A stretch of 64,000 nucleotides of DNA from Takakia lepidozioides (GCA_030704615.1 CM060732.1:70370001-70434000), one strand, 5' to 3'. Positions 2,932 to 54,136 are shown, counted from the first letter of the stretch. The notes: a model not told the origin generated them from the sequence alone. Made by a program: numbers and translations.

Positions 2932-5900
2932 TTTGCTGCCACATTGTCCCTTTCTCCTTTCTTATAAATCAATTTGACAAGGCCCTCTGAAATCTGCGAG
3001 GGCATCGCTTGTTTGAGGAGGATGTCATTGGCCATGGCAAGAAAGTCATCCCCTATGGTTTGCCATAAAGCTTTAAACAATTCAACAGGCAGCCCATCTA
3101 GACCTGGACTTTTGAAAGATGCCAGGGCGTCCGCCGCCTTTCCAAGCTCTTCCATAGTGACAGGTTCTGCCATACTTATCTTGTCAGTAGCAGAGAGAGA
3201 GCATGGAATGTTTCTGAGGAGAACATTTCTTGCCTCTTCCACCAAGGGAGTATGGTCTCTCTTTTGGAAGAGTTGTCTAAAAAAGTCAGCAGCAATGCTG
3301 GACATCTTTTTTGAGACAGCAGTTGAAGTACCCGATGCATCACGCAGGGAGGGGATCAGAGTAGAAGCACGGCGTTGGGCTGCTTTAGCAAAGAAGTATT
3401 TTGTCATTTTTTCTCCCTTTAGTGACCAGTTGACGCCAGCCTTTATCCTAATGAACTGCTCTCTTGAGTTTAACAATAGCGAGAGGTTTCTCTTTGCAGT
3501 TTTGTAAGAGATGAGGGTTTGGGGGTCATCCCTTCCCTCTTGCAGTTGAGATTGGCAAACAAGAAGACATTTAGTCAGGGCTTTCTCTCTTCTGGCAATT
3601 CCTCAGCTTTCTTCTGAGACAGTTCCTGGCAAGTGCTTCTCAAAATCTAAAGCTTAGAGAGAAAAAAGAGGGTAGGGGAGGAGAAGGGGAGGTCAGCAGA
3701 GGACCAAACCCTTTGGAGCGAGAGAATAACCTCTGGGTCTTTAAGTAGTGTGGGGTTTAGTTTGAAAAAACCCCTAGCCTTGACTCTGGACCCAGGGGTG
3801 TGGAGATCTAGCTGGATATTAGAGTGGTCAAACCCTGGAGGAATTGGATTAATAGCTTTTTTCACAAACCAATTCTACAGATGAGCAGAGCAGTAAAAGC
3901 TATCAAGCCGATCAAGAGAGAGGTTGGGAGGCTCTCTATTGTTAGCCCATGTGAATCTTAGCTCACCTTCTGCAGGGTGAGAAGCATCCAATAGACCGAT
4001 TGCTAGACAAAGAGAGTCCTAGGCGTCTCTTTTGGCAGTAGATAGGCCATGGACATTAGAGCCAGATCTGTCAATGTCTAATTCAACCATATTGGAGTCA
4101 CCTCCTACAATCTAGTGCTGGATATCCATATGCTGCAGCACCTTTAACCTTACAAGAGACCACAAGTCAATGTGCTCTTCTTCAGCGTTGGGAGCATACA
4201 TATTTACCATGCCAACCTTCCCTACGGACTGACCCATATTCATGATGATAAGCTGAACATGACCCTGGACACATATCTCATTAGCAAGAATACTAGGGCC
4301 CAACGAAGGAGAAACCAGGATCGTTGTCCCCCCTCTTGAGTCCACTACGGTGGGGTTCCAGAAGCAGAGTTAACAGGCCACGGAGATGCACCCAGGGAAG
4401 CAATTTTAGCTGGGTCCAGCTTGTGTTCTTGCAAAAAAATTACAGAGGATCGATTGATAAGATGAGAGACTCATAGTCTAATTCTCGCCCTTTTTGGAGC
4501 TGAGTGATCAGATCCAATGCCTCTTATGTTCTAGCTGGTTAGGGAGCAATTCATGGTACATGTGGTAGCAGGCCCGCGGCAATCCTACGATTTGATGGCC
4601 AGGCATGAAGGAACCTGAATTTGGTTCTTTTATCAAGGGGCTGAAGCGTGTAGATCCACTTAAAGCCAACAGGGGGGGGGGGTATAAGCGGGATATTCCA
4701 CAAATACGCTTGCCTAGACCTCTTCCTTTTGTTTACGCAATGTAATTCCATGAATTGGTTCCTGGTATCTTTGAACATTGACAAATCTGCCAAGGTAAGA
4801 TTCCAGGATAGAATTGAAGAGAGAAGGCCAACAGAGGTATCAAAAAGAAGAGAAAAAGAGGCATCGTTCCATCCTAGCAGGACCTTGTTTTCCATGGGTT
4901 GGTGTTCCATGACCAGCATCCAGCCTCTTTTTAGATTGGTATTGTCTGGAACAAAGAAAACAAGAGGAGCGTAAGCATGAGGAACATGCTTACCGCAAGG
5001 TGGCGAGTTTACAATCTCCTCCGACTGCATCGCCTCGGTGATGTCCTTGTGTGCCCCATTGGAGGAGAGCACCATGTCTGTGTTGTTGTATATCACCAAC
5101 TCATTGTTGTTGATGGACTCCACACTCCTGCCTTCCTGCACTGCCTGCATTGCCAAGCCTTTGAGCTTCTGCAAACTTGCCAGTTCTGCTACCATTCGAA
5201 TACCTTCTTCCATGATTAGGGAGCTGCGTGCCCAGGCATTGGGGTCGTTGACCCTACAAGACAAGCCAAATTTGTCCACCCATACCCCATTGATAGGCTT
5301 GTTCGAGGCCTGCCCCAAGTCGGTAGCATGGAAGATTGGGAGCACATGTATAACCGCCAAATTGACAAGGGCAGCGTTGTTCTCTACCATGATACCTATG
5401 TCATGAATGTGAGATAGAGATAGAGAAATATGGGGGAAGAACTCCTTGAGGATCTGGCTGGTTAGGAAGAGAGTGATATCCTTCACACTTCCGACCCCCA
5501 AATCCTTGGCCAAGGGCTCAGAAACCCATGCAGAGCAGAAACCCTCCTCGTCCTCTGGCAAGCAAAAATTTGTGTAATCATCAGAAAGGGTGTAAACCAA
5601 AGGAGTTACACAAATAGCTGCCCTGTCTCGCGCATATGCTGATCCGGGGGCCCATCCATTGAGAGGCTTTTTGGTGAAAGTGTGCAGTTCCAGGAAAGCA
5701 ATTGCCAGACTTGTGCTATCCAAAAACTGCAGCTCCTCCTCAGAGAAAGGAAAAGATGCCCAAGCGTCCTTCACTCTGATAGGATGTAGATCATACGGGC
5801 GGTTTGGGTGTATCCATGACCCGGACTTCTCTCCGTTTCTCTTCCCTTTTTTAGAAGTTTGACCTTGATGAGGGACCTCCACGTCTAATTCCATGGTGAC

Positions 5901-7300
5901 TGGAGCGTGAGTGGCCTGAGCAGCAGTCTTGTATGATGAGCCAACTACTTCTGTCTGTGGAAAGGGGTGCTTGGCATCGTCGGAGGCGTTTTGTCTGTTG
6001 ATTTTGGAATAGTTGGATCGCACATGACCTTCACCGTTGCAACCAAAGCAAATCGTGGAGATGAGCTCCTCGTGGATAGCTACCATGATATATGAATCAT
6101 CTAACGTTGGCAACTTGACGGACGAGCCTATTGGCTTAGTTTCCGGCATCAGAACAACCAACTTGGGCATGCCATTGTCTCTGGTGAAGTCAATGTAAGC
6201 AGCTTTTGTGTCCACGCTTTTGATGGTATCTTGAATAGGCTCGAACACGTTCAGAGAGCCGATGAAAGTGCCGAAGCTGGCCCCTATTTCAGGGAGAGAA
6301 GAGAGATATATGGCAGGCAGGAAAGGGATTGCAATAACCCTCGGTTTCCAGAGCACTCCCTGTTTGTGACCCCAGTCATGGGTCTAGGGGAAAATGAAAA
6401 CCTTTGCTGCTGACATTTGTGTCTTGAACTTGAGAGCCGATTCTGCTTCGGCTGAGTTGCAGAATAGAACCAGGTAGAAACCTCTGCCCATGGAAAGGCA
6501 AAAGTGTTGGTCGAGTCCTCCCTCCGCTCCAATGTGTTTCACGATCCACGTGTGGATCCACTTCCTAGCTCTAAGCTTCCCAGGGAAGTAGAGGAGAATT
6601 CCTCTCTGAGTGAGTTTTTCTGCTTGCACCTTGAGCTTTTCTTTGTCAAGTGCTAACACTGGCTGCTCATTGGTTTCTTGTGGAATGGAGTCCTCCCATA
6701 CCCCCTCATCTTCCGTGGAAAGTGGTCAATGATCGGTGGGGTTGGGCCTTTGCCCAAGATTGAATCGCCCGTACCATTGGAGGTAGAGTAGTTCTTAGTG
6801 ATCCATTTTGACTTCCCCTTGTTCATCGCAAGTGCAGATCCTGGGCGAATCGATGATCCCCCCCCTATTCCTCGCTTGTTGGCTGTACCTGGCACTCATG
6901 GCTTCAGATTTTGAGGAGAGGAGCAGACTGCACCTGTAGTATGCAACAGACGGTCACTCACCTCACCCCACACCCCCCAATTTCACAGTAAGAAGACACT
7001 TGTGTAGGGTATGGAAGAGACAGCTTAGAACAAGCAACAGAGTGGAGGCTAGAGGTAGAAACGTGTGATTGAGATGCAAGACTACACAATCTGTCACCTT
7101 TCGAGAAGCGGCAGGGAAGATGATTAAGAGTAACAGCAGTAAAGGGAGAAGGGGGAGCGCTCTTAGAAATATGAGGCCACTTGCAGCTTGGAATCCTGAG
7201 CGGGAAAAGGAATCGTGTCAAAGCCGCGTTTGCAGTCAAGAAATTAAAGCTGAGCAGATGGAGGGCATTCTGGAGTAAACCGCGCAGGCATTGCAAACAT
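2932..7300 (-). mobile_element. L1-clade LINE retrotransposon, degenerate, 3'-truncated
   Basis: ORF1 ~6900-4551 with MGRGFYLVLF and a degenerate zinc knuckle CFGCNGEGHVRSNY. ORF2 4554-2932 has APE endonuclease motifs (S*NIRG, LQEHK, NMYAPN, GGDSN, RLDSFY, FDH) and the start of RT (KSPGLDGLPVELFK, LIYKKG). 5' boundary approximate. Confidence 0.9.
4551..6356 (-). CDS. LINE ORF1 (gag-like), largest open segment
   Basis: 601-aa ORF upstream of the endonuclease; zinc-knuckle-like motif; stop codon overlaps the ORF2 ATG. Confidence 0.7.
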   Translation of the reverse strand: MLWKPRVIAIPFLPAIYLSSLPEIGASFGTFIGSLNVFEPIQDTIKSVDTKAAYIDFTRDNGMPKLVVLMPETKPIGSSVKLPTLDDSYIMVAIHEELISTICFGCNGEGHVRSNYSKINRQNASDDAKHPFPQTEVVGSSYKTAAQATHAPVTMELDVEVPHQGQTSKKGKRNGEKSGSWIHPNRPYDLHPIRVKDAWASFPFSEEELQFLDSTSLAIAFLELHTFTKKPLNGWAPGSAYARDRAAICVTPLVYTLSDDYTNFCLPEDEEGFCSAWVSEPLAKDLGVGSVKDITLFLTSQILKEFFPHISLSLSHIHDIGIMVENNAALVNLAVIHVLPIFHATDLGQASNKPINGVWVDKFGLSCRVNDPNAWARSSLIMEEGIRMVAELASLQKLKGLAMQAVQEGRSVESINNNELVIYNNTDMVLSSNGAHKDITEAMQSEEIVNSPPCGKHVPHAYAPLVFFVPDNTNLKRGWMLVMEHQPMENKVLLGWNDASFSLLFDTSVGLLSSILSWNLTLADLSMFKDTRNQFMELHCVNKRKRSRQAYLWNIPLIPPPPVGFKWIYTLQPLDKRTKFRFLHAWPSNRRIAAGLLPHVP

Positions 7301-10300: not shown

Positions 10301-10306
10301 CTAGTG

Positions 10307-10366
10307 GACTTGAAGTGTTTTGTGTTTTCACTAATTGGCGTTCACTTCAAGATCAAGCCTATCTAG
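10307..10366 (+). pseudogene. MAGO: Isolated last exon of a MAGO NASHI paralog
   Basis: Encodes [19 protein letters not shown], matching exon 3 at 18055-18114 (-), with similar sequence just after the stop. Confidence 0.85.
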
Positions 10367-12083
10367 AAGCCGGACTCAAGATTATGCAAGGATGAGACTC
10401 CCAAAAGGACAACCTGTTTGCATGTTTGACCATCAATCAATTGCTCGTTCTAGGACAAACTCAGGCTTAGCATTAGTTGTGCATTGCACAAGGTGCTTCA
10501 TCCTTGGCCCCTCATTGTAGTCTGCCAATTTGGTGTCACTGACTGATATTCTTGGACCTGATCATACCCCTTCACCATGTATGGTCACGATAATAAAATT
10601 TCAAACTTCTGTAGCATGCAGTGTGTTCCAAAACGGAGCAAGGTGTCTGTCTGCCTATGCTAAAAATGATATTGGACACCATTGTGCACAATAGGTCTTC
10701 CTTGACTCACTGCCTTGCGGGGATGCACTTGGGTTGTGATCTATGTGCATTGGGCACTACGGTGCTTTGTGACAATGAACTTGTCAGTGTCACTATGTAT
10801 GTGACTTGACCTGTGCCTCTGCTATGACTGAAATTGTTACCTTTATTAGCACTAGACCATGAACACCTCTCCAGCTCTCCCTGAAAAGAAAGGTAGTCAC
10901 ACACATGCAGATGGTTGGTCCGTAGCAGAGTGGATCGTTGTCAGCAGTATGTAGAGTTGGCAGATGTACCCAAGCTTGTTCGCACTCGCCCGCATTGCTT
11001 CAAAGATCAAAAACTCTTGTTAGAAGCTTTATCACCCTCTTTGTCGCCTCCCTATACTCATCACATGAGAGAATTTGGTACAGGATAAGTAAATTTTGTA
11101 GTTCATTGTGCCAATGGCATTGTGCACCACCTCTCCAAAAGTCAAGGTGTCCAGGCAATGTACATCACACACAAATGCAACTGCCCACAATGGCATTGCT
11201 TCCTAGATCTCCCTACAACGCTTGGCTTGCTAACCGAGAACGCATACTGAACTCACAATGTCAGACAGTTCCGCAGTGAGGCGGAGTAAACTTGAATGCA
11301 AGCAACATTACAAGGCAGACTTCAAGTTGTTCCCCTGCAATCCCAGCATGTGCATCCAGTGCTACAAGCAATCACCCTCAGTACAAGTTGATAACATCAC
11401 ACCAATTTCACTAGACCAACAACGCTCGAGTACCTACGCAGATTTGACCTTCACATTTGCAGTTGCTATGGGCACTGCAGCTCTCTTCTTTAGTCTGTCG
11501 AAGCCATTACTCCGGGGTGGACTGTAGCCGAGCTGGTCCTTTGTTATGCTGATCATCATTCTTGCAGGCAAAGCTTGAAAGACTACCCGGCAGCCCTTAC
11601 TCTTTGGGGTGCAGGTCTGTTAATGTCGACGGTTACATAGCAGCTTTGTAGGCGCTGTACAGGAGTCGGCGGGAACGAAGCAAGCTGCGGTGGTATCCAT
11701 GTTCAATAAGGGTTCTGTTTCTTCTCTTCAGATGGTCCGGATAGAAGTGGCGTGAGGATGGAGAATGGTTGGAAGTGTTGATCGATTGATCCAACTCGGT
11801 TACCGATGCCTCTTGAGATGGAAGTGCACCTAGTGATGACGTCTGATTTGTAATTGGAGGTGAGGAGTTAGCTCAAGAGGGTGTGAGGCCAGTGGGTGTT
11901 CACGGGATGCAGCCATGGCATCGTGAGGGTTGAGATTTGAGCAAGAAAGATTGAAACCTTGTATGTGTGATTGATCTCTGAAGTGACATCGGCCATGGGA
12001 CGTAATTGCAAAAGCTGGCGCACGTTTGACTGGCTGCCTGCTGAGCTGAGCAGGTGCTTGAAATGTTGGTTTGTTGACAAGAA

Positions 12084-15048
12084 TTGAACATATGGTGGCT
12101 GAGGAATTCGAAGGTCTACAAGAAGAAAACATCCATTATGCCGAACATCGATGCTTGCGAAGCATGGCCACCTGTGCTAGTGATAGGACACGGAGATAGG
12201 ACTGATAAGAGTGATGTCCCAGCACGGTGCCTTGAGAACCTTAAGTTGAACTTGAAGAACTTGGATATGGAATTTTATCGGGAACGATTGATAGTAGCTC
12301 AAAGATATCCTGGGAGATGCTGCATATATGTTTTCTCACCTTCGGGTAGTGCCTATGTTGACGCAAAGAACTTGCAACGGAGGTGGATACGTTCTCGCGA
12401 TGGGGCACAGCCCCAAACTTGCAAGGCGACTACGATACAGTGTTGGTATGCAACGGTATCAGACATGACTATGATCGACCCAGACAGACAGCTTGTGAAG
12501 GAATGGGCACCCCGTGAAGTGCACATCGATCCCGAGGAGGTGTGAATAACTCTCTCACACAAGTGCAGTCATGGTCATGGGCCCTAATGTGATATTGCAA
12601 ACATTTTCTTTCTTGAACATTCTTTCATTCTCTTTCTATGGTTAAAGTGTCAATTTGCAGGATGATGGAAATGATCAAGAATCTGGAGAGGAAATCGAAT
12701 TCCCATCTGATCGCCGAATGACAGACCTGATCAAGAGAATGGTGGCCACCGATGACTCGGTGCTGGAGCGTAGAGCGGCCACCGATGACTACAATGAGCT
12801 TCGCGTGAGCAGCGTGAGTAATAACCCTCCATCGTATTCCCAACCGTTTGATTCCCGGGCATTATGATGTCTACGCATGTTTGTGATGACGAACCTTACC
12901 AACGCGAATCTAGTAGTGTACGAACTGGAGAACTGGAGACTGACTACTGCCATTTTGTGATCTTGTGTGCTGTTGGATCAATGTTGGAATGCACGGACAC
13001 TGTTGACTGTAGGTGTAAGTTTGGAATGCACGGACACTGTTGACTGTAGGTGAAGCGTCTTCAGTCAGATTGGAATAAGGCATTGTGGTCTTTCCTGAAG
13101 GACGACAAGATGCGAGCGATGTGGCTGCAACAACTATGGACCCCCCATGGTGATCTCCTTGCAGGTGCGTGTGAAGATCGTACTCAAAATTTGCTGCGTA
13201 AGTCGACTGTTCTCGAAGGAGACTTGCTCTCAAAAATGTAGGTGAAATGTGTGCCTGCCCCTGTACTCTTCCCCCTTCTTTATACCCGCATTTCTGTATT
13301 CATAGCCAGAGCAGATGGATGTCATCAGTCATGGTAAAGGGCTTCTTTGAGAAAGAAATGCTAGAATGCACCAGGGGTAAATTTCATTCTTGGGATTCGC
13401 TTCCCTTTCCACTATGGTAGTGAGCCTCTTTGTTTCTGCTGCTGTCCCATCTTTGTCTTTTCTGCTCTTTCAAAAATGGGTGCAGGCATTAACTTGGCTC
13501 GAAGACTACTGGGGCAACCCATGTCTAAATATCATTTTCTTTCTCTATCCCTGGATATAATAAGTGCCTTCCTTGTTCTTTTACTGAGTTCATTTCACTC
13601 AGTCTTAACCCGGGTGCTCTCACAATGAAACCCCACAAGCTCCAAGACCAAAAGTAGTGCATTTGCATGATGTTGCACATGTTTCTTTTGGGAGACCTGG
13701 TTACTTGTGAGAAACAGGGAGAGATCTGGCCACATGGGAAGTTCAAGATGATATATGACAGATTTTATAATGGTATCTCACAGGACAAGATTGGCTGTAG
13801 AGAAAGAGATGGACACATTGGAGATGAATGTACAGGAGAATGAATTTGCTATAGCTGAGCAAGAGGAAATACACAAATGTCAAGAAGAATTCTGGTTATT
13901 GCTAGAGTCATCACTGCGGCAGCATCACAAGGATACAATGGAGGTTAGTTGTTTTCCTCTATCTTGCACAGATTCTATGTTTCATGCTATCTGTGTTCTT
14001 TTCCTCCCAAGGGACATGATCTTCATGTGGATTAGTGTTTGGCTCCTGTTGCCGAAAAGGACTTGCACGGTATCATACTGAATTGGCGACAAAAACGAGA
14101 GTCCATCTTGGAGCGAAGGGTGAGTGAAAGGATGCAGTTGGTGGACCGCACCATAGTCACCAAGAAAGAAACACTCACGCTTCAAAGTATGCTGTCCGTT
14201 GAAGCTACTGTCGAGGTGATGAAAAAGGTGAATCTCTATTTGTGCTATTTAGCACCAGCCATCACCTTTCTGTTAACCTGTCACTCTGACTCAACGGTCC
14301 ATTGCAGTGGCAGCCACGCAAGCTTCAGTGTGGAGATCTCAGTAATCATTAGAACACTCTTTGCCTCAGAAGTGAGTAGTCTGACTTGGGTGGCCTCTAA
14401 CTAAATGCTTTTAATGGAAGTTCCTGAAGGCATTTTACCACCTCTGGCTGTTGGACAAGGTTCTATCATATATATAACATTGTATCTACAATTATGAAGT
14501 CATAAATCTCGCATGCATGATAGATCTTAGGTCATGTTTATTCAGTTTTATGTTGTGAAATTAAGATTGTTCATTTCCTTTAATGTCATCAAAGTTTTCA
14601 TGGTCATTTGGTTTTTAAGGATTTCTATACGTGTGTAGGTCGAGAATGTCACCAGATGGAGAAAGAGGACATGAAGAAGAAGCACAAAACGGAAGAGGTC
14701 AGGTTGTTGAGAGAGAAAGAGGACATGGAGAAACAGGGCAAAACGAAGGAGGAGACATTGCAAAGAGAGCTTCAAGAGGCAAGGCAAGCATTGCAGGAGC
14801 TTGAGCAAATTGTAGAGCAAGAATCTGAGTGTGCGGTTTGTTCTCGAGAAATGGAAGGCATCAAGGGAACTCGGAAGAGGCGGTTGAGTAGCTCTGGGGT
14901 TGAGTCAGCTCGGAAGAGAGTGTGTCTCAAACCATGCAACCATGCCGGGGTGTGTGATGAGTGTGCCATCAAGATCTGGACACAGACTCGGAAATGTCCC
15001 TTGTGCAACACCCAACTCACCGAGCGGCCAACTGCCATTTTCTTGTGA
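12084..15048 (+). CDS. XS-like domain + coiled-coil + C-terminal RING (C3HC4, IAP-like) protein, possibly disrupted
   Basis: Exons ~12084/12138-12539, 12661-12813, 13050-13237, 13784-13943, 14012/14036-14227 and 14639-15048. Phases are compatible for the first five; the link to the last exon is unresolved. WPPVLVI, CIYVFSPSGSAYVDAKNL and CWYATVSDM resemble SGS3 XS motifs. RING: CAVC...PCNH..VCDEC..CPLC. In-frame TAG at 14033. Confidence 0.6.
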
Positions 15049-15431
15049 CTATCAGCATATGCCCGATGCACCAGCAAGATACATTTGAATCCGTTGGATG
15101 ACACACTAGTCGGTTCCAAGTTCTAAGTTTTTGAAGAAAGAGAGGGATCAGCTTTACTTATTTTGCGACTAAGTTCTTTGCAGGTTCCAGCATTCCCAAC
15201 CTTATGAGAGGTATGGAACACTCGTGGGCTCAGTAACCAGCTCATCAGGCTCAATGAAAACAAAAACTTCAGGATTTTTGTGACTGTGACTGCCATCAAA
15301 AGTAGGTAAAATTACCTGATCATCTCCAGAGGTCAGTTGCATCGCATTTTGACGGAAGTTCTGGCCAATGTGGCTTGAATTAACAAAATTGGTTTCCTCT
15401 AATATTTGATTATGGAGTAAAACTGACTATA

Positions 15432-16345
15432 TAATGGTCACATCAAAGAGAACCGGTATCATACATTACATCAATGGAGAGGTAGAGTGCCCTAGGAGAT
15501 GTCAAGTGGGTGTCATATGCATTTCCTGCACATCTGTGATAGAATTGAATTCAAATGGAGGTCCATGGAGATTAGAAGTAACCGTTTGTAAAATGCCCCT
15601 AGCTTTGGTTTGTTGACCATATGAGTATGGAAATTAAGTGAACGCGTGAAGACAGTATAACCTTCTGGAACTGGGTACTCATGGTCAACACTTTTACGTA
15701 CTAGAATAGCATGCTTCTGAGTACTAGATGATGAATCCAAGAAGGCGGGGGGAGAGAGAGGCACTCAGTGTGCCTGCAGTGGCATTGTGGTCGTGGTCCC
15801 ACCCAGTTTGCAGGAAGAAGAGAAAAGACTCACCATGGTAGATGCTCTGCTCTGATTGGTGCTGGTGGGAGAGAAGTGCTTGACTGACAGTGATCGGGCT
15901 CCCCATTTTCATCATGTCCTGCTAAAGATTGGTTAAGCAGGAATCGCACTTGATTTAGAGGTTAGAGGCACATGTCAGGTATTGAAGAGTCGAATTTGAA
16001 CCTCGATGTGACCTTAACCCTGTGGCTTCTGTACCTGAAAGTAGATACCCATGGATCCATGTGAAAGGACAGGTGAGAGACCAACTGTTGTATTTGCAGC
16101 TGTTGCCTCCTTGCCTCTTTCCCCCCTCTCAAACTGATCTGATTTCCTCCTCTTACAGTGTGGGATTTCATGGGATTAGTTTTTTAGCATTCTCATAGTG
16201 AACATTGGTGGTGAGATGCATGACAAGGATTCTCAGCCAGAAATACAGGGTATTGTTGAGTTAAGATTCTCTTGCTGCTGGAGTTTGTTGGTAATTCTAT
16301 CTTTGTGCTGCCTTCCTGGACAATGTCATTCATGTTTGATCAGGG
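15432..16345 (+). repeat. Duplicated segment of a KNL1-paralog locus, inverted relative to 58020-58530, with a ~460-bp extra insert
   Basis: GGTCACATCAAAGAGAACCGGTATC and GAGATGCATGACAAGGATTCTCAGCCAGAAATACAGGG match the reverse complement of 58020-58530. Confidence 0.8.
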
Positions 16346-18054
16346 CGTGCTTCAAAACATATGTATAAAAGAGAGGAAATTACAGGGTTAACAGGATGAA
16401 GAGAGGTAGGTCCACCTTGTTGAGCAGGGGCCGAACACTAGACACTCTGGGGACATTGAACTGATTTTTCTTCAATCCAAGCAGTGAATTGACACCTGGA
16501 AAACATAGAGTAATGAGGTGTGCTGTTTTGTGTATGTGAGGACTGGACTTGCCAATTTCTTGTGCCATGGTCTCCAAATACGATGATGCTACTGTCGCGG
16601 CTTGAAAGATTAAAGGTTTTCTATGCACTTGGGCAGGCAGTGGCCAGGTGTTTCTGCCTAACCAGGCAGTTGTGTAGTAAAATGCTACAACTATCCATTG
16701 CCCCCATAATAGCTGTACATGGAGCTGCTCTCGATCATTTGATGTTGAGAAAATACGTTTAACACACTGGGGAGGAAGGTCGATCTGTGAAGAGACTTGC
16801 CACAGCAGTAGAACTAGAAATCAGTTAGGAACCATGCCGTGGAGAAACAAATGCATGGAATACATGCGAGCCCTGCCCTGTTACGATTATGAATAGGTTG
16901 TGAATATATGAATAGGCTGTCAAAACCTGTCATTGCCAGCTTCAGAAGCTTTAGAATCAACATGCTAATTGTGTCGATGCTGAGTGTCCTCACAAAGTGT
17001 GCTCACAATGATTGAAGACCGTGCAAATCATTGTACAATTCATCTATAATTAAATACATCTATATCTGTCTTCAGCTAACTTGTTCTCCGAAACTAATCC
17101 TGCCTAGGAGCATCGCCAACAAACCTAGTCACAGACACATGAGCTTATCATGGGTTTCTCACGAATTTGTGGAACCAGGACTAAAATATAGGAAACAGAA
17201 AAAAATAAAGGAAAGGGAGGTATGGTAAGGTTACCCCTTGCTGCGGTGTAGTGAATTCACTGGAAGGAAAGGAATGGATGGACATAGTTGTAGTGGCCAG
17301 TGGTTTTGCATCTGTGCTGATCTGTTACCTGCAGGTAAGAGGATGAATCCCACGATGGTTCATCGTGCAACAGCCTCATGCCTGGAAGGGGCTATTTTCT
17401 ACCCTTCCTCCAGTAGGGCCTGAATTGTGAAGGAAAACAAAAGGAAAACTGTATGAACTTAATGCAGAAGTGCCAAGCTGCCGCTTTTCCAATTGTGAAT
17501 CATTGCCCCCAGGTTTCCCTTTTCAGAAAAAAGAGAAAGGAAAATATAAATAAGTGTAGATTCACTACAGATATAGTTGGGCCCTCTTCGGCATTCCTTT
17601 ATTGGTTCACCTAACACCAAGTCAAGAGATTCAGCAGTTTGTTTGGCTATAAGAAGCTTCTATGGCAATTTGTCTTTCAGACAGGCATCAGAAGCCCATC
17701 CCACACCTAAAAATACAAACGCTGGCACTTGTCACTCTCTGACATACTCTATAACTCCTCTCATAAACAGGTATGCCACTCCAGTCTCACAGGGTGAGTC
17801 CAGAGAGTTATCCCCAACAAGTGAGGAGAACATCACCTGAAGGTCTCGCCATACTCAAATGGTCTTGGTCAACATTCAGTGACTTCTAACCTACAACTGT
17901 TGCATGTAAGTTCTACAACCGTACCTGGTGAAGGAAGTTGAACAAAAATTTGAGGCACCAACACTTGCAATGGTGGTAAACAATAAAGGTCAATACACTA
18001 CAGGATGTCTCAGTTCCTCCTAGTGCAGTACAGGCACCGTCTTGAATCCAGTTT

Positions 18055-19777
18055 CTAGATAGGCTTGATCTTGAAGTGAAGGCCGATTAGTGAAAAAACA
18101 AAGCACTTCAAATCCTGCCATTGAAAAGAATTTATCAGTACCAAATTTCTGCCCAACAGGAACCCCCCCAACATTTCTAATCTAAGAGTCCTAGTGGAAG
18201 GCAACAAACCCTACAAACTGATGAAACAAAAAGAACCTAGGCCGTGGAAGTGTGCATGTGGAAGCTGTAACTGTGCACTGGGCAGTCAGAGAAACTTTAT
18301 GGGACAGACCCACTTTGAGAAAGTCATCCATTGACTGCTGACAAACCTTCGCAAAGTCCTTCGAACAGCCAATCAGAAGACCAACATGCCAGCATACTAG
18401 ACTAACACAGCTCTGTACATTTAAGGTACTCATGCCGCACCTGGACGAGGTAGTAAAATATGCGCAGTCCCTCCGGGTCTTTGCTACTCTGGACATCAAG
18501 CAAAGAACCAATCTTCGAGGTAGTGAAGGAGATGTGCTCATTGCCCATCACAATCTCCAGCTCTTGTCGGCCAATTCTGTCTGGTTCTGGCCAATTGTTA
18601 TCATCTTCTTTTAGAATCTACACATTGCAACCCACAGATAGAGAAAGCAAATCTTCATCAAGTCAATCCGAAGATAGACAATCAAACAGAGCTGCGTAAC
18701 TGCCAGTGCCTTGACCTCTTAGATTGGACAGCTCCCGAACTATCTATATCCATGAAGAATTAGTTTAAACACCAATCACAACTGAAAGATATTGCATTTG
18801 TCTATAAAGTGTCACACTTCAGTCTGGCACCATACACAGCTGCATTTATGTCTTGAGACACACTTCAGTGGTAGTCTAGGAAGCAATCAAGTCGCCCTGC
18901 TTCTCAGCTCAGTCTCTGTTCCTGGTGAGACCAGAAAACTTGAAAGTACACTTTCCGTGACCCTGGATAAAATGAGGTTAACACAACATGCTGTTCCAGC
19001 TGATGGCTGACAAATTGCCTTTGCTGTACAGTTACCTGGGGCTTCAATTAGACCATGCCCTGGTTGTATGGACGAAATGCCGCCCTTCCTGGCAGGACGA
19101 ACTAGCTTGATGGGAGAAGTAGGCACAATGGTACGCTGGCTGTGACAGCGAGTCATTTTCTACAAGCAAGAAAATGAACATCCCAAACCTGTTCATACTA
19201 ATTTGTGCTTATCCTTAATCCGAGCAGGAGGTGCAATTAAGAGCGGGAAAAGTCCTTCCCAGAAATACGATAAGAGGCGGAAGAGGGTTTCAGATGCTAG
19301 GTTGGTAAGTCTAAGCTCATCATTTTCGTTGGAAGCTAACCTAATTACGGAATGTAGTCAAAGTTCTCTCTGCTTCCATTCTATCTCTATCCAGACCTCT
19401 GAAAGAACTCCCAACGCATTCTTCCATGATAAACAAAAGAGCTCCTCTCTCGCCCTTTCCAGTTTATTCCGTTCCACCACTACAAGTCTCCATGGTCCAA
19501 TACATTCAATCATACCACCTACGTCCACAAATTACTGAAGCGAAAAATTACAAATGGCACCCACCTCGCTATCGTTGATAATCCTGCGGCACTCGCGGAG
19601 GGCAGCCTGGGTAAGAAAGACTTCCTTCCTTATCATTGTGTCGTTTTTGTAGTTCGAGTTGTTAGCATACCTGAGCTTCCCGTCAGGCCGGAACTCAAAC
19701 TCCAGAAACTCATGCCCGAACTTTCCCTTGTGCCCCACGTAGTAGCGCACATAAAACTCTCCCACCTCCTCCGCCAT
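18055..19777 (-). CDS. MAGO: Protein mago nashi (exon junction complex core), 149 aa
   Basis: Exons 19777-19565, 18617-18441 and 18114-18055 (GT-AG, phase 0, 450 nt in total); [40 protein letters not shown] ... [13 protein letters not shown] ... LHFKIKPI*. Confidence 0.97.
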
Positions 19778-20331: not shown

Positions 20332-23300
20332 ATGGATCGCGCGGAAGCTTTGGGTAGTCCTGAATACAAGGGGGCAGACGATACCGTTATTCTGGACGTG
20401 TTTGATGAAGGCAGTGCAGTGCAACACAGGAAATTACGGCGGTCTTCTTTACGCCGTGTGAGCTTTGCTGAACAGGCCTCCATCCATGTCTTTGCGAGGG
20501 ACGAGGAATACGAGACTCCTCCCGAGGGCACTGAGACGCTGTCTACCTACCATTCCACCCAAACTTTCACTGCGAAGTCAAAGAGTCCACAGAGAAGGTC
20601 TCCGAGGCTTGCTTTCAAAAGGATGGAAATGGAGATGGATAAAGAGAATGCGGGAATCTTCGATGGTGGCACTGTGCGGGTTGACGGCCAGCCGAGAGGA
20701 CAAAAGCGGCCTCTCGCTGTCAGAGATCGAACAGATGGTTGGATTGATGATGGAGATGTCTCGGCCCATGGAAGGTAAGAATCTAGTTTTCCACTTTGTT
20801 TCTGTCTGCGCTCAGACACGTGCCTTGTCCCTTTCCTTGTCTGATTCGCTCCTTCCTTCTTTGCCAGCTTCTGATTTGCTTCAATCCGAGTTGGTACAAA
20901 GAATTGACTACTGTGCTAAATCAATCAATCGCCCAAACTTTGCCACTACTGGTTTGTGCTTGCGTATGTGTTGAGCGTTCTGAAAGGAAAATGGTTGTGC
21001 CATATCCAGTTGCGATGATAATACCGGGCCTGTTGACCTTCGGCACTTGTCGTTTGGAGAAAGTAAAACGCCGCTCGAAGATGATGACAACATCACCATG
21101 GACAGCAACACATTCCATACTAGGCTCTCACAGCTCAAGGCAGGAGGGATGTCCTTCTCACAGCAAGGAGCAGATGGAAGTTTGGATCACGTCCAGTCCC
21201 TGCAGTCTACTATGAACTTCACCCTACTCATGCCCTCTGTTGAAGGGAATTCCGATTCCTCAACCTACGGGGGAGAGACGTCCAGTAACATGTGCCTCAC
21301 ACCAACTCCCCGGAATGCCTCTGCTGATGATACTGCGACAGCTTCCTGTGCAGCGACTAAACATATTCTTGCAGAGAGAACAAGGGATGTTGACATGAGC
21401 CCCATACCAAATTTCCCTCTAACGACCTCTGCAACAAGTTCCTGTGAAGGAGCGAAACAGATTCTCACAGAGGAAACAAGGGATGTTTTGGAACAGAACG
21501 GAGGGAAGGCTTTAGTGGAGGTTGAAGAGGAGCTGACTTCGCAAGCGAAATGTGGGAGATTGGAAGTGGAAGTTGTCCCCAGCAGACTACCGCTTGAAGG
21601 TTCTTCCATGGCAGTCTATCGGGTAGCAATGGACAACGAAAACGGTAGCCCTCACCCTGCAGAGACAAGGAGTCCCTTACCAGACGAGACTGTTTCTATG
21701 GACATATCACTTGTCTTACAGGTCAACGAAGAGGCATTGCTTCTCAGGCCTGAGAGCTCAACGCCTCCTGCTACTCACACAGAGACCCTGCATATAACAT
21801 CATTGACCATGGCAAAGGGCGCTGGTAGACCTTTTCAGGAAGCAAGTGTCTTGCCAGCGATTGAGAAGGTGGAAGGCTATGCAACCGAGGACTTGGACAA
21901 CGTTGTTACAGAAGCTATTCCAAGGTTCAGTGACCTTTTGGCCGCCGATATGTCATCCCCTGATGTACCACCTGCATCGAAGAGACAGAGGTCAAGTGAC
22001 AACTTGAATGAAGGGGGCCTGTCTCATACAAGTGCTTCCACGTCAATTCATGAAAATGCACGCTACCCTGAACCCCTGGTGGCTATTCCAAGGTTGGCCG
22101 CTGATATGTCATCCCCTGATTTACCACCTGCTTCGAGTCGACAGAGGTCAAGTGACAATTGGAATGAAGGTGGCCTGTCTCATACAACTGCTTCAATGTC
22201 AAAACATGAAAATGTACGCCACCCTGAACCCCTGGTGGCTATTCCTAGGTTGGCTGCTGGTACGTCATCCCCTGATTTACCACCTGCTTTGAATCCACAG
22301 AGGTTAAGTGACAACTCGAATGAATGGGGCCTGTCTCATACAACTGCTTCAATGTCAAAACATGATGTACGTCACCCTGAACCCCTGGTGGCTATTTCTG
22401 CTGATACAACATCCCCTGATTTACCACCTTCTAACCTGTCTCATACAACTGCTTCAATGTCAAAACATGACAATGTGCGCCACCTTGCACCCCTGGTGGC
22501 TATTCCAAGGTTGGCCGCTGATATGTTATCCCCTGATTTATCACCTGTTTCAAATAGACAGAGGTTAAGTGACAACTGGAATGAAGGGGACTTGTCTCAT
22601 ACAACTGCTCCAACGTCAAAACATGAAAATGTACGCAACCCTGAACCCCTGGTGGCTGTTCCGAGGTTCAGTGACCTCTTGGCCGCTGATATGTCCTCCC
22701 CTGATTTACCACCTGTTTCTCATAAACAGAGGTTAAGTGACAACTGGAATGAAGGGGACTTGTCTCACACAATTGCTTCGACTTTAACACATGAAAATGT
22801 ACGCGACCCTGAACCCCTGGTGGCTGTTCCAAGGTCTAGTGACCTCTTGGCCGCTGATATGTCATCCCCTGATTTACCACCTGCTTCGGATAGACAGAGG
22901 TTAAGTGACAACTGGAATGAAGGGGGCCTGTCTCATGCAACTGCTTCATCGTCAAAACATGAGAATGTACGCGACCCTGAACCCTTGGTGGCTGTTCCAA
23001 GGTTTAGTGACCTCTTGGCCGCTGATATGTCATCCCCTGATTCACCACCTGCATCTCATAGACAGAGGTTAAGTCACAACTGGAAGGAAGGGGGCCTGTC
23101 TCATACAACTGCGTCAAAACATGAAAATGTACGCTACCCCGAACCCCTGGTGGCTATGCTTGAATTTTCTGTTCTCTTTTCTACAGGGCATACCTACACT
23201 TGTCTCTGTTTTGTATGTCTTGCAGAAGATTGAGTTTCGTTTCGAATTGACTCCTTTCCTCTCACTCTTATTTCAAAGACAGTGGAGCTTACAACGTGAT

Positions 23301-36491: not shown

Positions 36492-39400
36492 TCAGGAATA
36501 TGTGTATATTGGTTTCTGGGTCAAGCGTCTCTTACACATAGGACATCGTTTTTCCTCACTCCAGATTCTTAGCGAACATTCCATACAAAAGCAGGTATGG
36601 CCGCAAGGATATAAACAACTCCTCTTTCTTGGCTTCTCCAGATCGCTTGTGGAGCAGCTCGGCAACAATCGATTCAGATTAGTGCCACTGCCATCCAAGT
36701 TGGGTTGCGTGCTGCAAGGTGGATCCAACTCATTGTAACAGATGCTGCATTCATGTTTCTGCACATGTTTGGCATCCTCTCTCTTTTTGAGATTGTTGTT
36801 CGCCTCTTCAAGATTTCTCCACGAGATAGCCTGAGCTGCGTCATATTGGCTCTTCAGGTCTTCTTCAGACTGCATTCATTGCACCACACACATCCATGGA
36901 TATTGTCGAGTGTTTTCTTAACATGATGCCCAAGAAGTACAGCTCGCATAAATGTTTGTGAGGGAGCAACCTAAAGTAAAACAACTGAAGAAAATCCAGC
37001 AAAATTCATCTTTGCAATGTTTCAGACGTGACAAGATCAACACAAACTTACAGAACTGATTTGATGGACATGTGACTATTCTGTCTTTGGAAAAGAAGTC
37101 CAAGACAGGAGATATGCTTTCATAGCCTCGCTGCATGCATGATATGCTTGATTTTACAAACAATTAGCAACCAAGTAGCAACACAGACCTATGAGCAATT
37201 TGATTGCAAGCATGCAAACATTAATCTGGTATCACCACATATAGAAGAGAGGGCTGCACCTTCTCTATAACCCCTTGAATAGCTTCAACCTGCACTTGGA
37301 TGGTTTTTTCCTATGTAGCTATAACAAGTTCCATAACTTCCTTTCTTGCAGTCATCTCACGATCAAATAATGCAACTCTGATGGCTTGCTGCTGCTTGAG
37401 AAACTGTAAGAGATCAATAGTATTACAAGGGTCAGGTGACCTAATCAGGGAAAAAGATTAGGAAAAAAGTTGTCCCAGTGGTGCATCCAATTTTCTTTTT
37501 GACCTCTTCTTCTGGTGGCTGGTTGCAGCTCCCTCACTTTTAACAATTTGTCCAACCCTCCGATTCTCTGCTCCAGAGATCTCATCAACAACCATGTGCA
37601 CTTGCAGACAAACAACAAGACAGAGAAGGCATGTCCATGGCCAACCTGTTCCTTGCTCTGCGGTCAAAAGAGGAAATAATGGAAATTTCTTCAAAAAAAT
37701 ATCTGAGCAAAAGAGAGGAATAGGAGATACTACCTAGAACTAGAGGTCCTCGGTCAATGAGTTGGAAGGTTACAGGAAGATAGAATTTGCCAAAGAGAAA
37801 GTAAGGCTCTCACCTCCAAGAATTCCGTGTTTTGCCTCCTCAAAACCATAGCCGATATGTGTAATTCATGTTCCAAATCATGTAGTAGTTTCTCTTTGCT
37901 TTTGGCGTCTTTGCTCTTCTTCTCTACAACCTGCATTGTCTCTAGCTCCCTCTCTTCTACCATCAAGGCCCTATCCAACAATCACAGCATGGCGCATTTT
38001 CTCAATATATCAGATACATGTCATACCCTATCATGGATATACCCACACCAACTGTAACATTTCACCACACCACCGCAATGACTAATGACAAAAACTTTCT
38101 TGCCCAGACTTCGTGGCGACTTTCCGCGCATATGAGGCCCATCAGAGGAGCAGTTCTCTGTTTTCCAACCCTGTATGGTTTGAGGTGGCATTTTCGCAGT
38201 CAGGCCCGAATATCCTAAGTCCATAGTCGAGTTTTGAATTCACTCTACAAAGACAAGCCATTGTTAGACTGAAAGGGTTGCATGGCTGGTTGGCCGACAC
38301 CTGCTCCGCTAAGTATCGGCGGGTACGTCCAGTAGCAAGTCTGAAATTTGCACGCGAGGGTGGAACTTGACTTCGATATCTGACACAGAGAAAAGCTAGG
38401 GACGCCAAGTTCTGACACGGAGTTTGCGTGATATGAGCTTCTTCCCCTTCACACTTTTGATACCCTGATTAGTCAAGAGGACTTCGGCGTCAAAGTGTGG
38501 AGATCTGCTGCACCTACAAGTTGTCAGGTAGTGATTTGAGTCTCTCCAAACTGCTTTTCCCAAGCTGAGCACCACTTATGGCCCATGGTTCCCGCATCCA
38601 GCACTCCCTTCTTTGGCTGTAAAGTAAAAAATTCTCTCTCTCACTGTGGTTGTCTTGCAGGTCTTCGTCGTACAGCTGCATTTGCCGTACGCAAGTTATT
38701 ACCAAGCCAGGAGTGACACAAAGAAATTACGGACAGGGGATCCAATCGATCTAAATCTTTTCAGATCTGCAGAATCAGAAGACTGGTCACTAATCAATCA
38801 ATCAATCACGAGTCTTTTAGATATAGCAAGAGATATTTTAGAAGGGTCCGATCAATCAATCACGAGTCTTTAGATATAGCAGGAGATATTTGAGAAGGGT
38901 CCGAGCTCTAGCACCTGTTCAACCAATTCGCTTCGGGCTTCCTCGTCGGCCTCCTCGACAGCTTCCACGGAGAGATCTGCAGCTGTTATTGTCCGTATGG
39001 CATCCGCTATTAGCCTTTATTGTGACACTGCCACTTTTCTTGGACATTCCGCCTGTACACCATTTAATTGCCAACAACGGAAGGCCAGTCAGAAGTAACA
39101 CAAAAACCAGAGACAACCATGTGTGCTTACGAATTGTGGACCACAAAAGTAGAGTACTTAACCATGTGCCTAGAGACTAAACCCAGCTCGAAGACTAAGA
39201 ACATAAACCACACAAAATGTCGATTGGGATCAATCTCATTCATGTCATCCACTGTTGCATAATCCAATCGAAGAGAAGTTGGAGAACCAGCATTGAGCTC
39301 TCGGGCTGCCGCATAACCACTGGAAACAGGCGGAAAAACGTACAAGAAAGTTCTTTTGTTCTTTCCAAGTTCTGTTGCTTTCGTAAGGATAATCCATCTG

Positions 39401-39622
39401 TTCCAGACCATGCTTCAACCGCCGACGCGCATACTCACGCCAATGCTCGCCCAACAAATGCCATTCATGATGTCTCATGACGGTCACAGGTGGCCACACG
39501 TAATCGGTATTGCCAGACATCTTAGACGTTACCCAGTGATTGTTGAGAGATCCAACTCTCAATTGAAACTTGGGCTCGTACTCCACCTCAGTAAACCAAC
39601 ACTCAACTCCACACTCCACCAC
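36492..39622 (-). pseudogene. Second XS-like + coiled-coil + RING paralog (disrupted)
   Basis: YVWPPVTVM, FLYVFPPVSSGYAAAREL and LDYATVDDMNEIDP (frameshift near 39385); coiled-coil exons with a premature TAG near 37311; RING CSIC...PCGHTCFCMEC..CPMC; exon layout similar to 12084-15048. Confidence 0.7.
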
Positions 39623-42059: not shown

Positions 42060-42744
42060 TCTTTTTCCCTGATTAGGTCACATGACCCATGCTATACTAT
42101 TGATCTCTTACAGTTTCTCAAGCAGCAGCAAGCCATCAGAGTTGCATTATTTGATCGTGAGATGATTGCAAGAAAAGAAGTTATTGAACTTGTTATAGCT
42201 ACAGTGGAAAAAACCATCCAAGTACATGTTGAAGTTATCCAAGGGGTTATAGAGAAGGTACAACCCTCTCTTCCCTTGTGGTCATACCAGATTAACATAC
42301 ACAGCTTCACCTATACAGGAGTATAAGTGTTAGACCCCAAGTTATGCATCATACATACCTGATGGTGGAAACAATTCGTTTGCATGATTGTAATCAAATT
42401 GCTCATAGTTCTGTGTTGCTACTTGGTTGCTAATTGTTTGTAACATAGCACAAGCTTTTCATGCATGCAGTGAGGCTATGAAAGTATGTCTATTGCCTTG
42501 GATTTCTTCTCCAAAGACAAAATAGTCACATGTCCATCAAATCAGTTCTGTAAATTTGAGTTGATTTTGTGACGTCTGAAATATTGCAAAGATGAATTTT
42601 GCTGGATTTTCTTCAGTTGTTTTACTTTAGGTTGCTCCCTCACAAACATTTATGCGAGCTGTACTTCTTGGCATCATGTTAAGAAAACACTTGACAATAT
42701 CCATGGATGTGTGTGGTGCAATGAATGCAGTCTGAAGAAGACCT
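42060..42744 (+). pseudogene. Inverted partial copy of XS-RING paralog 2, portion left of the LTR insertion
   Basis: Reverse complement of ~36856-37460 (FLKQQQAIRVALFDREM...). Confidence 0.9.
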
Positions 42745-53214: not shown

Positions 53215-53582
53215 ACCTGAAGAGCCAATATGACGCAGCTCAGGCTATCTCGTGGAGAAATCTTGAAGAGGCGAACAACAATCTCAAAAAGAGAGAGGAC
53301 GCCGAACATGTGCAGAAACATGAATGCAGCATCTGTTACAATGAGTTGGATCCACCTTGCAGCACGCAACCCAACTTGGATGGCAGTGGCACTAATCTGA
53401 AACGATTGTTGCCGAGCTGCTCCACAAGCGATCTGGAGAAGCCAAGAAAGAGGAGTTGTTTATATCCGTGCGGCCGTACTTGCTTTTGTATGGAATGTTC
53501 GCTAAGAATCTGGAGTGGGGAAAAACGATGTCCTATGTGTAAGAGACGCGTGACCCAGAAACCAATATACACATATTCCTGA
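53215..53582 (+). pseudogene. RING exon of the inverted XS-RING copy, right of the LTR insertion
   Basis: Near-identical to 36492-36860 (-); RING His changed to Arg (PCGRTCFC). Confidence 0.9.
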
Positions 53583-54136
53583 TGACGCTGTGGCGGTGCA
53601 CTTCATAAAGATCATAAATTTGTTAGTCAATTCAAGGCTTCTGTTCAGATTGCATTGATTCAGCATTGCATTCTTCAGAGTTCAAATCTGACTCTAGGGC
53701 CTTGTAATCTTAGATGTATCACCTCAAGTGCAATGCACCACATCCAGCTTCAGATTGGATTCACTGGTGGCTGCAGGTATTTTGAACATTTGGTAATATT
53801 GTATTGTAGTGCAAAGGTCTACTGCCCAGGTTTAGCAGATCACACAGGTCCAGGTCAGGAAGAAAGTAGAGGACCATTTCGAAGATGGTAATGATCCATA
53901 GCCCAGTGAAATACATCAGTAGAGCAGAAGTCCATATGGAATTTGTATGGTGAGCACATATCTATCTGCCAACGCTGCAACCACTTGTTTGCGATCAAGA
54001 GCAGCAACATTTGTCAAAAAAACATATGCATTCTACTGAAACTTCTTTTCTTTGGTTGAAGATCTAATGTACAACACTGACAAGAAACTGGTCAATTCAT
54101 CACAAGAGATCATTCCTGTAACTTAAGGACAGACTA

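What the first reader, a model, noticed from the sequence alone, without database searches (positions are those of the whole stretch)
12084..15048. XS-like RNA-binding domain + coiled coil + RING: a candidate RNA-sensing E3 ligase
Seen: exon 1 carries AWPPVLVI...GRCCIYVFSPSGSAYVDAKNL...IQCWYATVSDM, followed by coiled-coil exons and a terminal RING with a long basic insert (RKRR) between the first ligand pairs. Established: the SGS3/IDN2/FDM XS domain binds dsRNA with 5' overhangs and has the motif order VWPP.V...G..VL.F....GY..A..L...LYG..AT..D; those proteins end in a coiled coil or XH domain, not a RING. Inference: a lineage-specific fusion linking RNA-silencing substrates to ubiquitination, for example in antiviral or TE defence.
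Basis: partly seen in the sequence, partly recalled or inferred. Interest (0 to 1): 0.8.

Follow-up and report, generated by a model that had tools for sequence, protein, structure and literature searches.

The report
Expressed plant RING ligase, orphan N-domain
This is a real, transcribed six-exon plant gene for a RING-type ubiquitin ligase. Its N-terminal domain resembles the RNA-binding XS domain only in a few short motifs, no tool could confirm that, and in this assembly the last exon is one base out of frame.

Summary
The C-terminal RING is solid: Pfam zf-C3HC4_3 scores 37 bits against a cut-off of 27, all eight zinc ligands are present, and a 31-residue basic loop 1 is conserved in a paralog.

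Spliced contigs from two public runs define six coding exons with GT..AG introns. Overlapping contigs chain the N-terminal exon to the RING exon, so it is one gene.

The XS call is not supported by any test:
- Pfam at E<=10 found nothing.
- An exhaustive HMMER search of 1.84 billion representatives found nothing real.
- PDB sequence and profile searches missed the IDN2 XS structure.
- The Atlas gave no usable hit.
- AlphaFold gave pLDDT 35.

What remains is a motif-and-spacing resemblance. The resembling positions are the ones conserved in a paralog at 36.5-39.5 kb (-).

Only the about 28 residues before the RING show a significant heptad pattern.

Spliced as the RNA shows, the window stops 11 codons into the last exon. 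RNA contigs from one run carry one more T after 14656, which restores the frame.

This scan noted XS-coil-RING genes elsewhere in the same genome (s1-488436, followed up; s1-479821; s1-481975). This copy is probably a very diverged member of that family, at about even odds. I found no literature on such a fusion.

The parts
11500..12137 (+). Transcribed leader (5' UTR). It is unspliced in the contig and runs at least 17 nt beyond 11500. An in-frame TGA lies at 12075-12077. An upstream ORF at 12092-12199 overlaps the start codon.
   Evidence: X1 record 1 is colinear over 11500-12537. Sequence read.
12138..12539 (+). Coding exon 1, 134 codons: the whole N-terminal domain. WPP is at residues 10-12, YVFSPSGSAYVDAKNL at 64-79 and WYATVSDM at 103-110. 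It is XS-like by motif order only.
   Evidence: donor GT at 12540; paralog match, E 3e-6. No Pfam, PDB, HMMER or Atlas hit.
12661..12813 (+). Coding exon 2, 51 codons, an acidic linker.
   Evidence: GT..AG joints 12539/12661 and 12813/13050 in both runs. Splice sites checked.
13050..13237 (+). Coding exon 3, with an alternative donor after 13164.
   Evidence: Joints 13237>13784 (X1), 13164>13801 (X2, in frame) and 13164>13784 (X1, out of frame, short side).
13784..13943 (+). Coding exon 4, with an alternative acceptor giving a start at 13801. Probably helical.
14060..14227 (+). Coding exon 5, 56 codons. It is skipped in one X2 contig. Intron 4 is retained in one X1 contig.
   Evidence: Joint 13943>14060. 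Loose ends at 14229 and 13945 run into exon 6.
14639..15048 (+). Coding exon 6, holding the coiled-coil segment, the RING and the stop codon. In the window it is out of frame by one base after 14656.
14656..14657 (+). Single-base difference: the window has GATGG where X2 RNA contigs have GATTGG. The extra T puts exon 6 in frame with the RING.
   Evidence: table 4 (depth 14.6 of 18.2) and loose ends at 13945 and 14229. Frame arithmetic.
14659..14766 (+). 54-nt tandem duplication (two 18-codon EKEDM units). A minor X2 form has only one unit.
   Evidence: table 5c.
14752..14835 (+). Heptad-patterned coiled-coil segment directly before the RING.
   Evidence: Heptad contrast 0.78, reached by 0 of 300 shuffles. 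AlphaFold helix 2-55 at pLDDT about 90.
14830..15006 (+). RING finger (C3HC4, zf-C3HC4_3 type). The 31-residue basic loop 1 lies at 14842-14934. A 13-residue tail ending AIFL follows.
15049..15440 (+). 3' UTR covered by RNA contigs.
   Evidence: X1 record 6 and X2 record 11.
36492..39520 (-). Paralog with the same layout: an N-domain (MSGNTDYVWPPVTVM ... FLYVFPPVSSGYAAAREL ... DYATVDDMNEIDP) that needs a frame change near 39400-39355, a diverged middle, and a RING exon at 36492-36875.
53215..53693 (+). Inverted, broken copy of the paralog's 3' end. The RING His ligand is replaced by Arg (CGRTC). Further pieces lie at 42060-42273 and 42451-42671.

Best explanation
This is an expressed, lineage-restricted land-plant gene of about 493 codons (counted by exon lengths with the RNA-supported extra T). 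It encodes a coiled-coil RING E3 ubiquitin ligase. Shown: six coding exons are joined in RNA contigs. The C-terminus is a canonical C3HC4 RING of the zf-C3HC4_3 type, preceded by a long helix with a heptad pattern. The N-terminal domain of about 110 residues is shared with at least one paralog. Inferred mechanism: the helix pairs two chains. The two C-terminal RINGs then form a dimer like those of IAP, RNF4, IDOL and MEX3C and activate a ubiquitin-loaded E2; the short tail ending in Phe-Leu fits that type. The N-terminal domain chooses the ligand or substrate. That domain is most likely a very diverged copy of the XS (RRM-like, RNA-binding) domain of the XS-coil-RING family that this scan noted elsewhere in the same genome. 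I put that at about even odds, because it rests on motif order and shared architecture and on no statistical match. The copy in this assembly has one T fewer than the RNA contigs at 14656/14657. It is therefore either mis-assembled at that base or a truncated allele lacking the RING.
For: RING: Pfam zf-C3HC4_3 at E 2.8e-9. The paralog's RING gives E 2.4e-9. A profile search hits the MEX3C RING at E 1e-5. The AlphaFold model has a helix at 2-55 with pLDDT about 90 and a RING core at 60-73. The best Foldseek rows are all RING E3s, many of them dimeric (RNF4, IDOL, Bre1, cIAP2, XIAP), though weak. One gene: GT..AG joints 12539/12661, 12813/13050, 13237/13784, 13164/13801 and 13943/14060, plus loose ends running from exons 4 and 5 into exon 6. 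X2 record 7 spans exons 1-4 in a single contig. Family: in-window paralogs were found by tblastn, N-domain E 3e-6 and RING E 8e-19. The secondary-structure order in the poor model is strand-helix-helix-strand-strand-strand, loosely RRM-like. The plant context is shown by PPR genes. Scan notes s1-488436, s1-479821, s1-481975 and s1-480092 report XS-coil-RING genes and a cluster 0.2-9.7 Mb away; I did not test them.
Against: No tool links the N-domain to XS. Pfam finds nothing at E<=10 for either paralog. phmmer over 1.84 billion representatives finds only P0001, a translated tandem repeat whose 12 weak matches add up. PDB phmmer and profile searches at E<=10 miss the IDN2 XS entry. The Atlas gives no usable hit, with recognition 1859. 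The model has pLDDT 34.8. There is no zf-XS or XH domain. Exons 2-5 show no heptad signal. As assembled, the window puts a stop before the RING. Loose ends in both runs show a close paralog sharing 14076 onwards, so part of the 3' RNA evidence may come from another copy.
Confidence: 0.55

Rival explanations
1. The N-terminal domain is unrelated to XS. It is a lineage-specific protein-binding or otherwise novel module on an ordinary coiled-coil RING E3, comparable in layout to plant BOI/BRG or MIP1-type ligases. The XS resemblance would be a coincidence of short hydrophobic-strand motifs.
For: Every sequence test for XS is blank. The Atlas recognition score is below the level of known families. 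No relatives were found in protein or metagenome collections.
Against: The motif order and the spacing of about 100 residues fit XS across the whole domain. The matching positions are the ones conserved in the paralog. The scan reports an XS-helix-RING family with the same architecture in the same genome (untested here).
Confidence: 0.35
2. This is a working XS-coil-RING fusion that binds double-stranded RNA with 5' overhangs and ubiquitinates proteins on such RNA, acting in antiviral or transposon defence.
For: The same evidence as for the XS part of the best explanation. There is also a precedent for RNA-binding RING ligases, and the nearest solved RING by sequence is MEX3C. The family is duplicated and decaying locally, as fast-evolving defence genes often are.
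Against: There is no evidence of RNA binding. The XS domain is not detected. Known SGS3-like proteins combine XS with zf-XS, coiled coil and XH, not RING (PMC3378875; PMC6631971).
Confidence: 0.2
3. The copy in this window is a decaying pseudogene. It is transcribed but truncated before the RING, and the in-frame RNA comes from another allele or from a near-identical paralog.
For: The window reads VENVTRWRKRT-stop with the RNA-supported acceptor. The neighbouring paralog also needs a frame change, and a third copy is broken and has lost a zinc ligand. Loose ends at 14076 (X1) and 14640 (X2) show a second upstream sequence joined to the same 3' part.
Against: An X2 contig joins exon 4 directly to exon 6 with the extra T, and exon 4 is not shared by the variant upstream sequence. 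The other two coding differences are one synonymous change (12732) and one Ile/Val change (13869). A single-base indel is a common assembly error. An in-frame alternative acceptor exists at 14620, though no RNA supports it.
Confidence: 0.25

Closest known systems
SGS3 / IDN2 / FDM (SGS3-like, XS-domain) proteins of plants
   Same: Both have an N-terminal domain of about 100 residues followed by a helical or coiled region that can dimerise. The organism is a plant.
   Different: There is no Pfam XS match, no zf-XS and no XH. The C-terminus is a RING, which no described SGS3-like protein has (PMC3378875, PMC6631971). Sequence similarity is below detection in all searches.
Dimeric C-terminal RING E3 ligases of the zf-C3HC4_3 type (IAPs, IDOL/MYLIP, RNF4, MEX3C, Bre1/RNF20-40)
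   Same: The RING lies at the extreme C-terminus with C3HC4 ligands and a short tail carrying a near-terminal aromatic residue (AIFL here, YTYS in the paralog). A helix leads directly into the RING. These are the best Pfam, PDB-sequence and Foldseek matches.
   Different: Loop 1 is 31 residues here and about 44 in the paralog, long and basic with a conserved RKR.CL.PC motif, against roughly 10 in those proteins. The N-terminal parts are unrelated. Dimerisation and activity were not tested.
XS-helix-RING gene family noted by this scan in the same genome (s1-488436, followed up; s1-479821, s1-481975)
   Same: The reported architecture is the same (XS-like N-domain, long helix, C-terminal RING, multi-exon, expressed), on the same chromosome piece 0.2-9.7 Mb away.
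   Different: That family is said to have relatives from bryophytes to conifers. This copy has no detectable relative outside the window. I could not read those loci, so homology between them and this copy is assumed, not shown.

Membership tests
XS domain (Pfam PF03468; SGS3/IDN2/FDM) | Match to the family profile at or above the curated score | tested here: not met
   hmmscan against Pfam-A found no family at E<=1 or E<=10 for exon 1 or for either piece of the paralog's N-domain.
XS domain (Pfam PF03468; SGS3/IDN2/FDM) | Detectable sequence similarity to known XS proteins, including the solved IDN2 XS structure | tested here: not met
   phmmer over 1.84 billion representatives returned only a spurious repeat protein. 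PDB phmmer and a two-sequence profile at E<=10 gave only chance hits: GH18, AapF and RPN14.
XS domain (Pfam PF03468; SGS3/IDN2/FDM) | RRM-like alpha/beta fold | tested here: inconclusive
   The single-sequence AlphaFold model has pLDDT 34.8. Its element order (E13-16, H29-36, H44-47, E51-57, E60-66, E101-103) is compatible with the fold but carries no weight. No alignment deep enough could be built.
XS domain (Pfam PF03468; SGS3/IDN2/FDM) | Conserved motif order (VWPP/VWPW ... G..V..F ... G[FY]..A..L ... LYG[WF].A...D) over about 100 residues | tested here: inconclusive
The motifs are present in that order in exon 1 and conserved in the paralog.
XS domain (Pfam PF03468; SGS3/IDN2/FDM) | Binding of double-stranded RNA with 5' overhangs | not testable with these tools
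   Needs a binding assay. The property is cited from PMC6631971.
SGS3-like protein family (architecture) | Accompanying zf-XS and/or XH domains | tested here: not met
   The protein starts 9 residues before WPP, with an in-frame stop at 12075, so there is no room for zf-XS. No exon matches Pfam XH or zf-XS.
RING finger, zf-C3HC4_3 type E3 ligase | Profile match above the curated score | tested here: met
   PF13920 at 37.1 bits against a cut-off of 27, E 2.8e-9. The paralog scores 37.3 bits.
RING finger, zf-C3HC4_3 type E3 ligase | Eight zinc ligands in C3HC4 order with canonical spacing | tested here: met
   The pattern is C58-x2-C61-x31-C93-x-H95-x3-C99-x2-C102-x10-C113-x2-C116. All Cys positions are invariant in the three window copies. 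The His is lost only in the broken third copy.
RING finger, zf-C3HC4_3 type E3 ligase | RING fold | tested here: inconclusive
   The model's RING core has pLDDT 60-73. The Foldseek top rows are all RING domains, but with E>=0.2.
RING finger, zf-C3HC4_3 type E3 ligase | E2-dependent ubiquitin transfer; dimerisation | not testable with these tools
   Needs autoubiquitination and sizing experiments.
RING finger, zf-C3HC4_3 type E3 ligase | RING in frame with the rest of the protein | tested here: inconclusive
   It is out of frame in the window as assembled and in frame in X2 RNA contigs, which carry an extra T after 14656.

The most novel reading that the evidence does not exclude
Non-flowering land plants have a family of ubiquitin ligases whose N-terminal XS domain reads the double-stranded RNA intermediates of RNA silencing, and whose dimeric RING marks proteins sitting on those RNAs. 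This window would hold fast-evolving, partly decaying members, diverged past profile detection by conflict with viruses or transposons.
Probability: 0.15. Interest if true: 0.75.

Novelty: new variant of a known kind. Interest (0 to 1): 0.42.

Why it matters
If the N-domain is a diverged XS domain, the gene would join an RNA-silencing type of RNA-binding module to a ubiquitin ligase. My literature searches found no description of that combination, and it would give a testable link between small-RNA pathways and protein turnover in early-diverging plants. If it is not XS, the gene is one more lineage-specific RING E3 with an orphan substrate-binding domain and is of local interest only. In either case this copy is a poor representative of the family. 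It is the most diverged, has no outside relatives, and is out of frame in the assembly. The member followed up elsewhere in this genome (s1-488436) is the better entry point.

Tried and rejected
- Word-index protein searches with exon 1 and with the last exon found nothing.
- The exhaustive HMMER search with exon 1 gave one hit, P0001. It is a 1176-residue translation of 12 near-identical repeats whose weak matches sum, and its Pfam 'hits' are artefacts of the same kind. I rejected it.
- Two Atlas look-ups gave no usable hit.
- Two metagenome scans, with N-domain and RING alignments, found no relative.
- The single-sequence fold of exon 1 was unusable, so I ran no fold search on it.
- MAFFT misplaced the paralog's first piece (YVWPPV aligned to YVFSPS), so I used the two-row alignment A2 instead.
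- The weak tblastn hit at 28003-28074 looks like the E-type motif of a PPR protein (my reading, not tested), so I did not count it as a copy of this domain.
- The 30-nt loose ends of foreign sequence in the RNA contigs are not in the window.
- I considered a transposon-borne gene because a 76-nt inverted pair flanks it, but there is no target-site duplication and there are only two copies. This is left open.
- Look-ups in the scan's notes by sequence and by relatives were blank.
- All searches were exon by exon and frames were checked by arithmetic. As a result, full-length relatives of about 400-600 residues were outside the length window of the word search.

Full report
**What is there**

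The window is eukaryotic DNA, about 45% G+C with no tRNA genes. It carries PPR genes (Pfam PPR at E 1e-48 to 1e-51 at 32929-33876) and retroelement remains. That fits a land plant. A note of this scan calls the genome a moss, which I did not test.

**Gene model from RNA**

Two public runs of the same organism hold 45% and 32% of the sampled words of the stretch. Their contigs lie on it with canonical GT..AG gaps. I therefore treat them as RNA, although they are not labelled as such.

| Coding exon | Coordinates | Notes |
|---|---|---|
| 1 | 12138-12539 | first in-frame ATG; in-frame TGA at 12075 |
| 2 | 12661-12813 | |
| 3 | 13050-13237 | alternative donor after 13164 |
| 4 | 13784-13943 | alternative acceptor giving a start at 13801 |
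| 5 | 14060-14227 | |
| 6 | 14639-15048 | ends with the stop codon |

- I verified the splice signals.
- One X2 contig spans exons 1 to 4. Joints and loose ends carry exon 4 to 5, 5 to 6 and 4 to 6.
- The N-terminal exon and the RING exon therefore belong to one transcript chain. No single contig covers all of it.
- Isoforms 13237>13784 and 13164>13801 are in frame. Isoform 13164>13784 is not.
- The leader is long (at least 655 nt, unspliced) and holds an upstream ORF that overlaps the start codon.
- Frames were checked by counting exon lengths.

**A one-base problem**

With the RNA-supported acceptor, exon 6 enters in phase 0 and the window reads VENVTRWRKRT-stop. The RING ORF lies in the next frame.

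X2 contigs carry GATTGG where the window has GATGG (extra T after 14656; depth 14.6 of 18.2). The same TT is seen in contigs coming from exon 5 and from exon 4. With it the frame runs into EKEDMKKK...RING, for a total of about 493 codons.

A minor X2 form lacks one unit of a 54-nt tandem duplication (14659-14766) but also has TT. The X1 contig ends just before the site.

The window is therefore either wrong by one base or carries a truncated allele. An in-frame alternative acceptor at 14620 exists but has no RNA support.

Loose ends at 14076 (X1) and 14640 (X2) show a second upstream sequence, absent from the window, joined to the same 3' part. A near-identical partial paralog therefore exists elsewhere.

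**The RING**

- Pfam zf-C3HC4_3 matches at E 2.8e-9, above the curated score.
- The ligands are C58, C61, C93, H95, C99, C102, C113 and C116, numbered on window:14659-15045.
- Loop 1 is 31 residues, basic, and conserved as RKR.CL.PC in the paralogs.
- AlphaFold on the three-row alignment gives a helix at 2-55 with pLDDT about 90, a disordered loop at 65-89 and a RING core at 60-73.
- A profile of the three copies hits the MEX3C RING (E 1e-5).
- Foldseek rows are weak (E>=0.2) but are all RING domains, with dimeric ones (RNF4, IDOL, Bre1, cIAP2, XIAP) near the top.
- The position at the very C-terminus, the helix leading in and the tail ending AIFL resemble dimeric IAP/MDM2-type RINGs. That last point rests on my own knowledge and is an inference.

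**Coiled coil**

A crude heptad contrast test is significant only for residues 32-59 of the last exon (0 of 300 shuffles). Exons 2-5 are charged and nearly free of Pro and Gly but give no signal. 'Coiled-coil exons' is thus only partly borne out.

**The N-terminal domain**

It is a real family domain. A paralog on the minus strand (39520 down to 36492) has MSGNTDYVWPPVTVM..., then after a frame change ...FLYVFPPVSSGYAAAREL...DYATVDDMNEIDP (tblastn E 3e-6), a diverged middle and a RING exon (E 8e-19).

A third copy is an inverted, fragmented duplicate of that paralog's 3' half. Its RING His is changed to Arg.

Every test for XS was blank:

| Test | Result |
|---|---|
| Pfam at E<=10, both paralogs | no family |
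| Word search with exon 1 | no candidate |
| phmmer over 1.84 billion representatives | only P0001, a translated tandem repeat |
| PDB phmmer and profile search at E<=10 | chance hits only; IDN2 XS not reached |
| Atlas | recognition 1859 (threshold 2300), no usable hit |
| Metagenome scans | no relative |
| AlphaFold, single sequence | pLDDT 34.8, not interpretable |

What remains in favour of XS:

- The motif order and the roughly 100-residue spacing fit.
- Those motif positions are the ones conserved between the paralogs.
- The N-domain, helix and RING layout is the same.
- The scan's own notes report an XS-helix-RING family in this genome, one member followed up and said to have relatives from bryophytes to conifers (s1-488436). 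They also report a cluster 219-335 kb away. These notes are leads that I could not test, because those loci are not readable from here.

A domain of about 120 residues at about 25% identity would fall below the score needed in a library of that size, so the blank HMMER search does not exclude remote homology. The blank Pfam scan is the more telling negative.

**Comparison with the known**

Described SGS3-like proteins combine XS, zf-XS, coiled coil and XH. The XS domain is RRM-like and binds double-stranded RNA with 5' overhangs, and the coiled coil dimerises IDN2 (PMC3378875; PMC6631971). None has a RING. My literature searches found no XS-RING protein.

RNA-binding RING ligases exist in animals (MEX3C), so the concept has precedent.

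**Verdict**

The gene is best described as a lineage-restricted coiled-coil RING E3 with a family-specific N-domain. That domain may be a strongly diverged XS domain, at about even odds. The copy here is out of frame in the assembly. I rate interest as moderate, because a better member of the putative family has already been followed up elsewhere in this genome.

Noticed in passing
window 21047-23230 (+): An open frame of 728 codons. Its second half is made of about 8-9 tandem units of roughly 45 residues (AADMSSPDLPPAS.RQRLSDNWNEGGLSHTTAS.SKHENVR.PEPLVAVPRFSDLL). It has no Pfam or PDB match.
   Followed up: partly
window 4554-6356 (-): An open frame of 601 codons with no Pfam or PDB match. 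It contains a zinc-knuckle-like CFGCNGEGH stretch and may be a transposon-derived protein.
   Followed up: partly
window 10306-10381 and 18040-18115: A 76-nt inverted pair (89% complementary) brackets the RING gene at a distance of 7.7 kb. These are the only two copies in the window, and no target-site duplication is seen at the outer edges.
   Followed up: partly
window 36381-37457, 42060-42671 and 53215-53693: The 3' half of the minus-strand paralog is duplicated in inverted orientation (93-97% identity). The duplicate is split over 11 kb by retroelement remains (integrase 44098-44826, reverse transcriptase 47835-48443) and PPR-like ORFs at 49-50 kb.
   Followed up: partly
window 54519-55008 and 55687-56176: A 490-nt inverted repeat, 99% complementary, with 678 nt between the arms, lying in the most A+T-rich part of the window. 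Its nature is unknown.
   Followed up: no
window 12092-12199 (+): An upstream ORF of 35 codons in the long leader overlaps the main start codon at 12138. It may affect translation.
   Followed up: no
RNA contigs laid on window 14076 and 14640: Contigs of both runs join 213-255 nt of sequence absent from this window to the 3' part of the gene. This points to a near-identical partial paralog, or an alternative 5' part, elsewhere in the genome.
   Followed up: partly
P0001 (library protein, 1176 aa): The only 'hit' of the exhaustive search is a protein made of 12 near-identical 84-residue repeats. It also collects inflated Pfam E-values (BamE, CASTOR1 and others) with zero passing stretches. This shows how repeat proteins sum weak scores.
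   Followed up: yes
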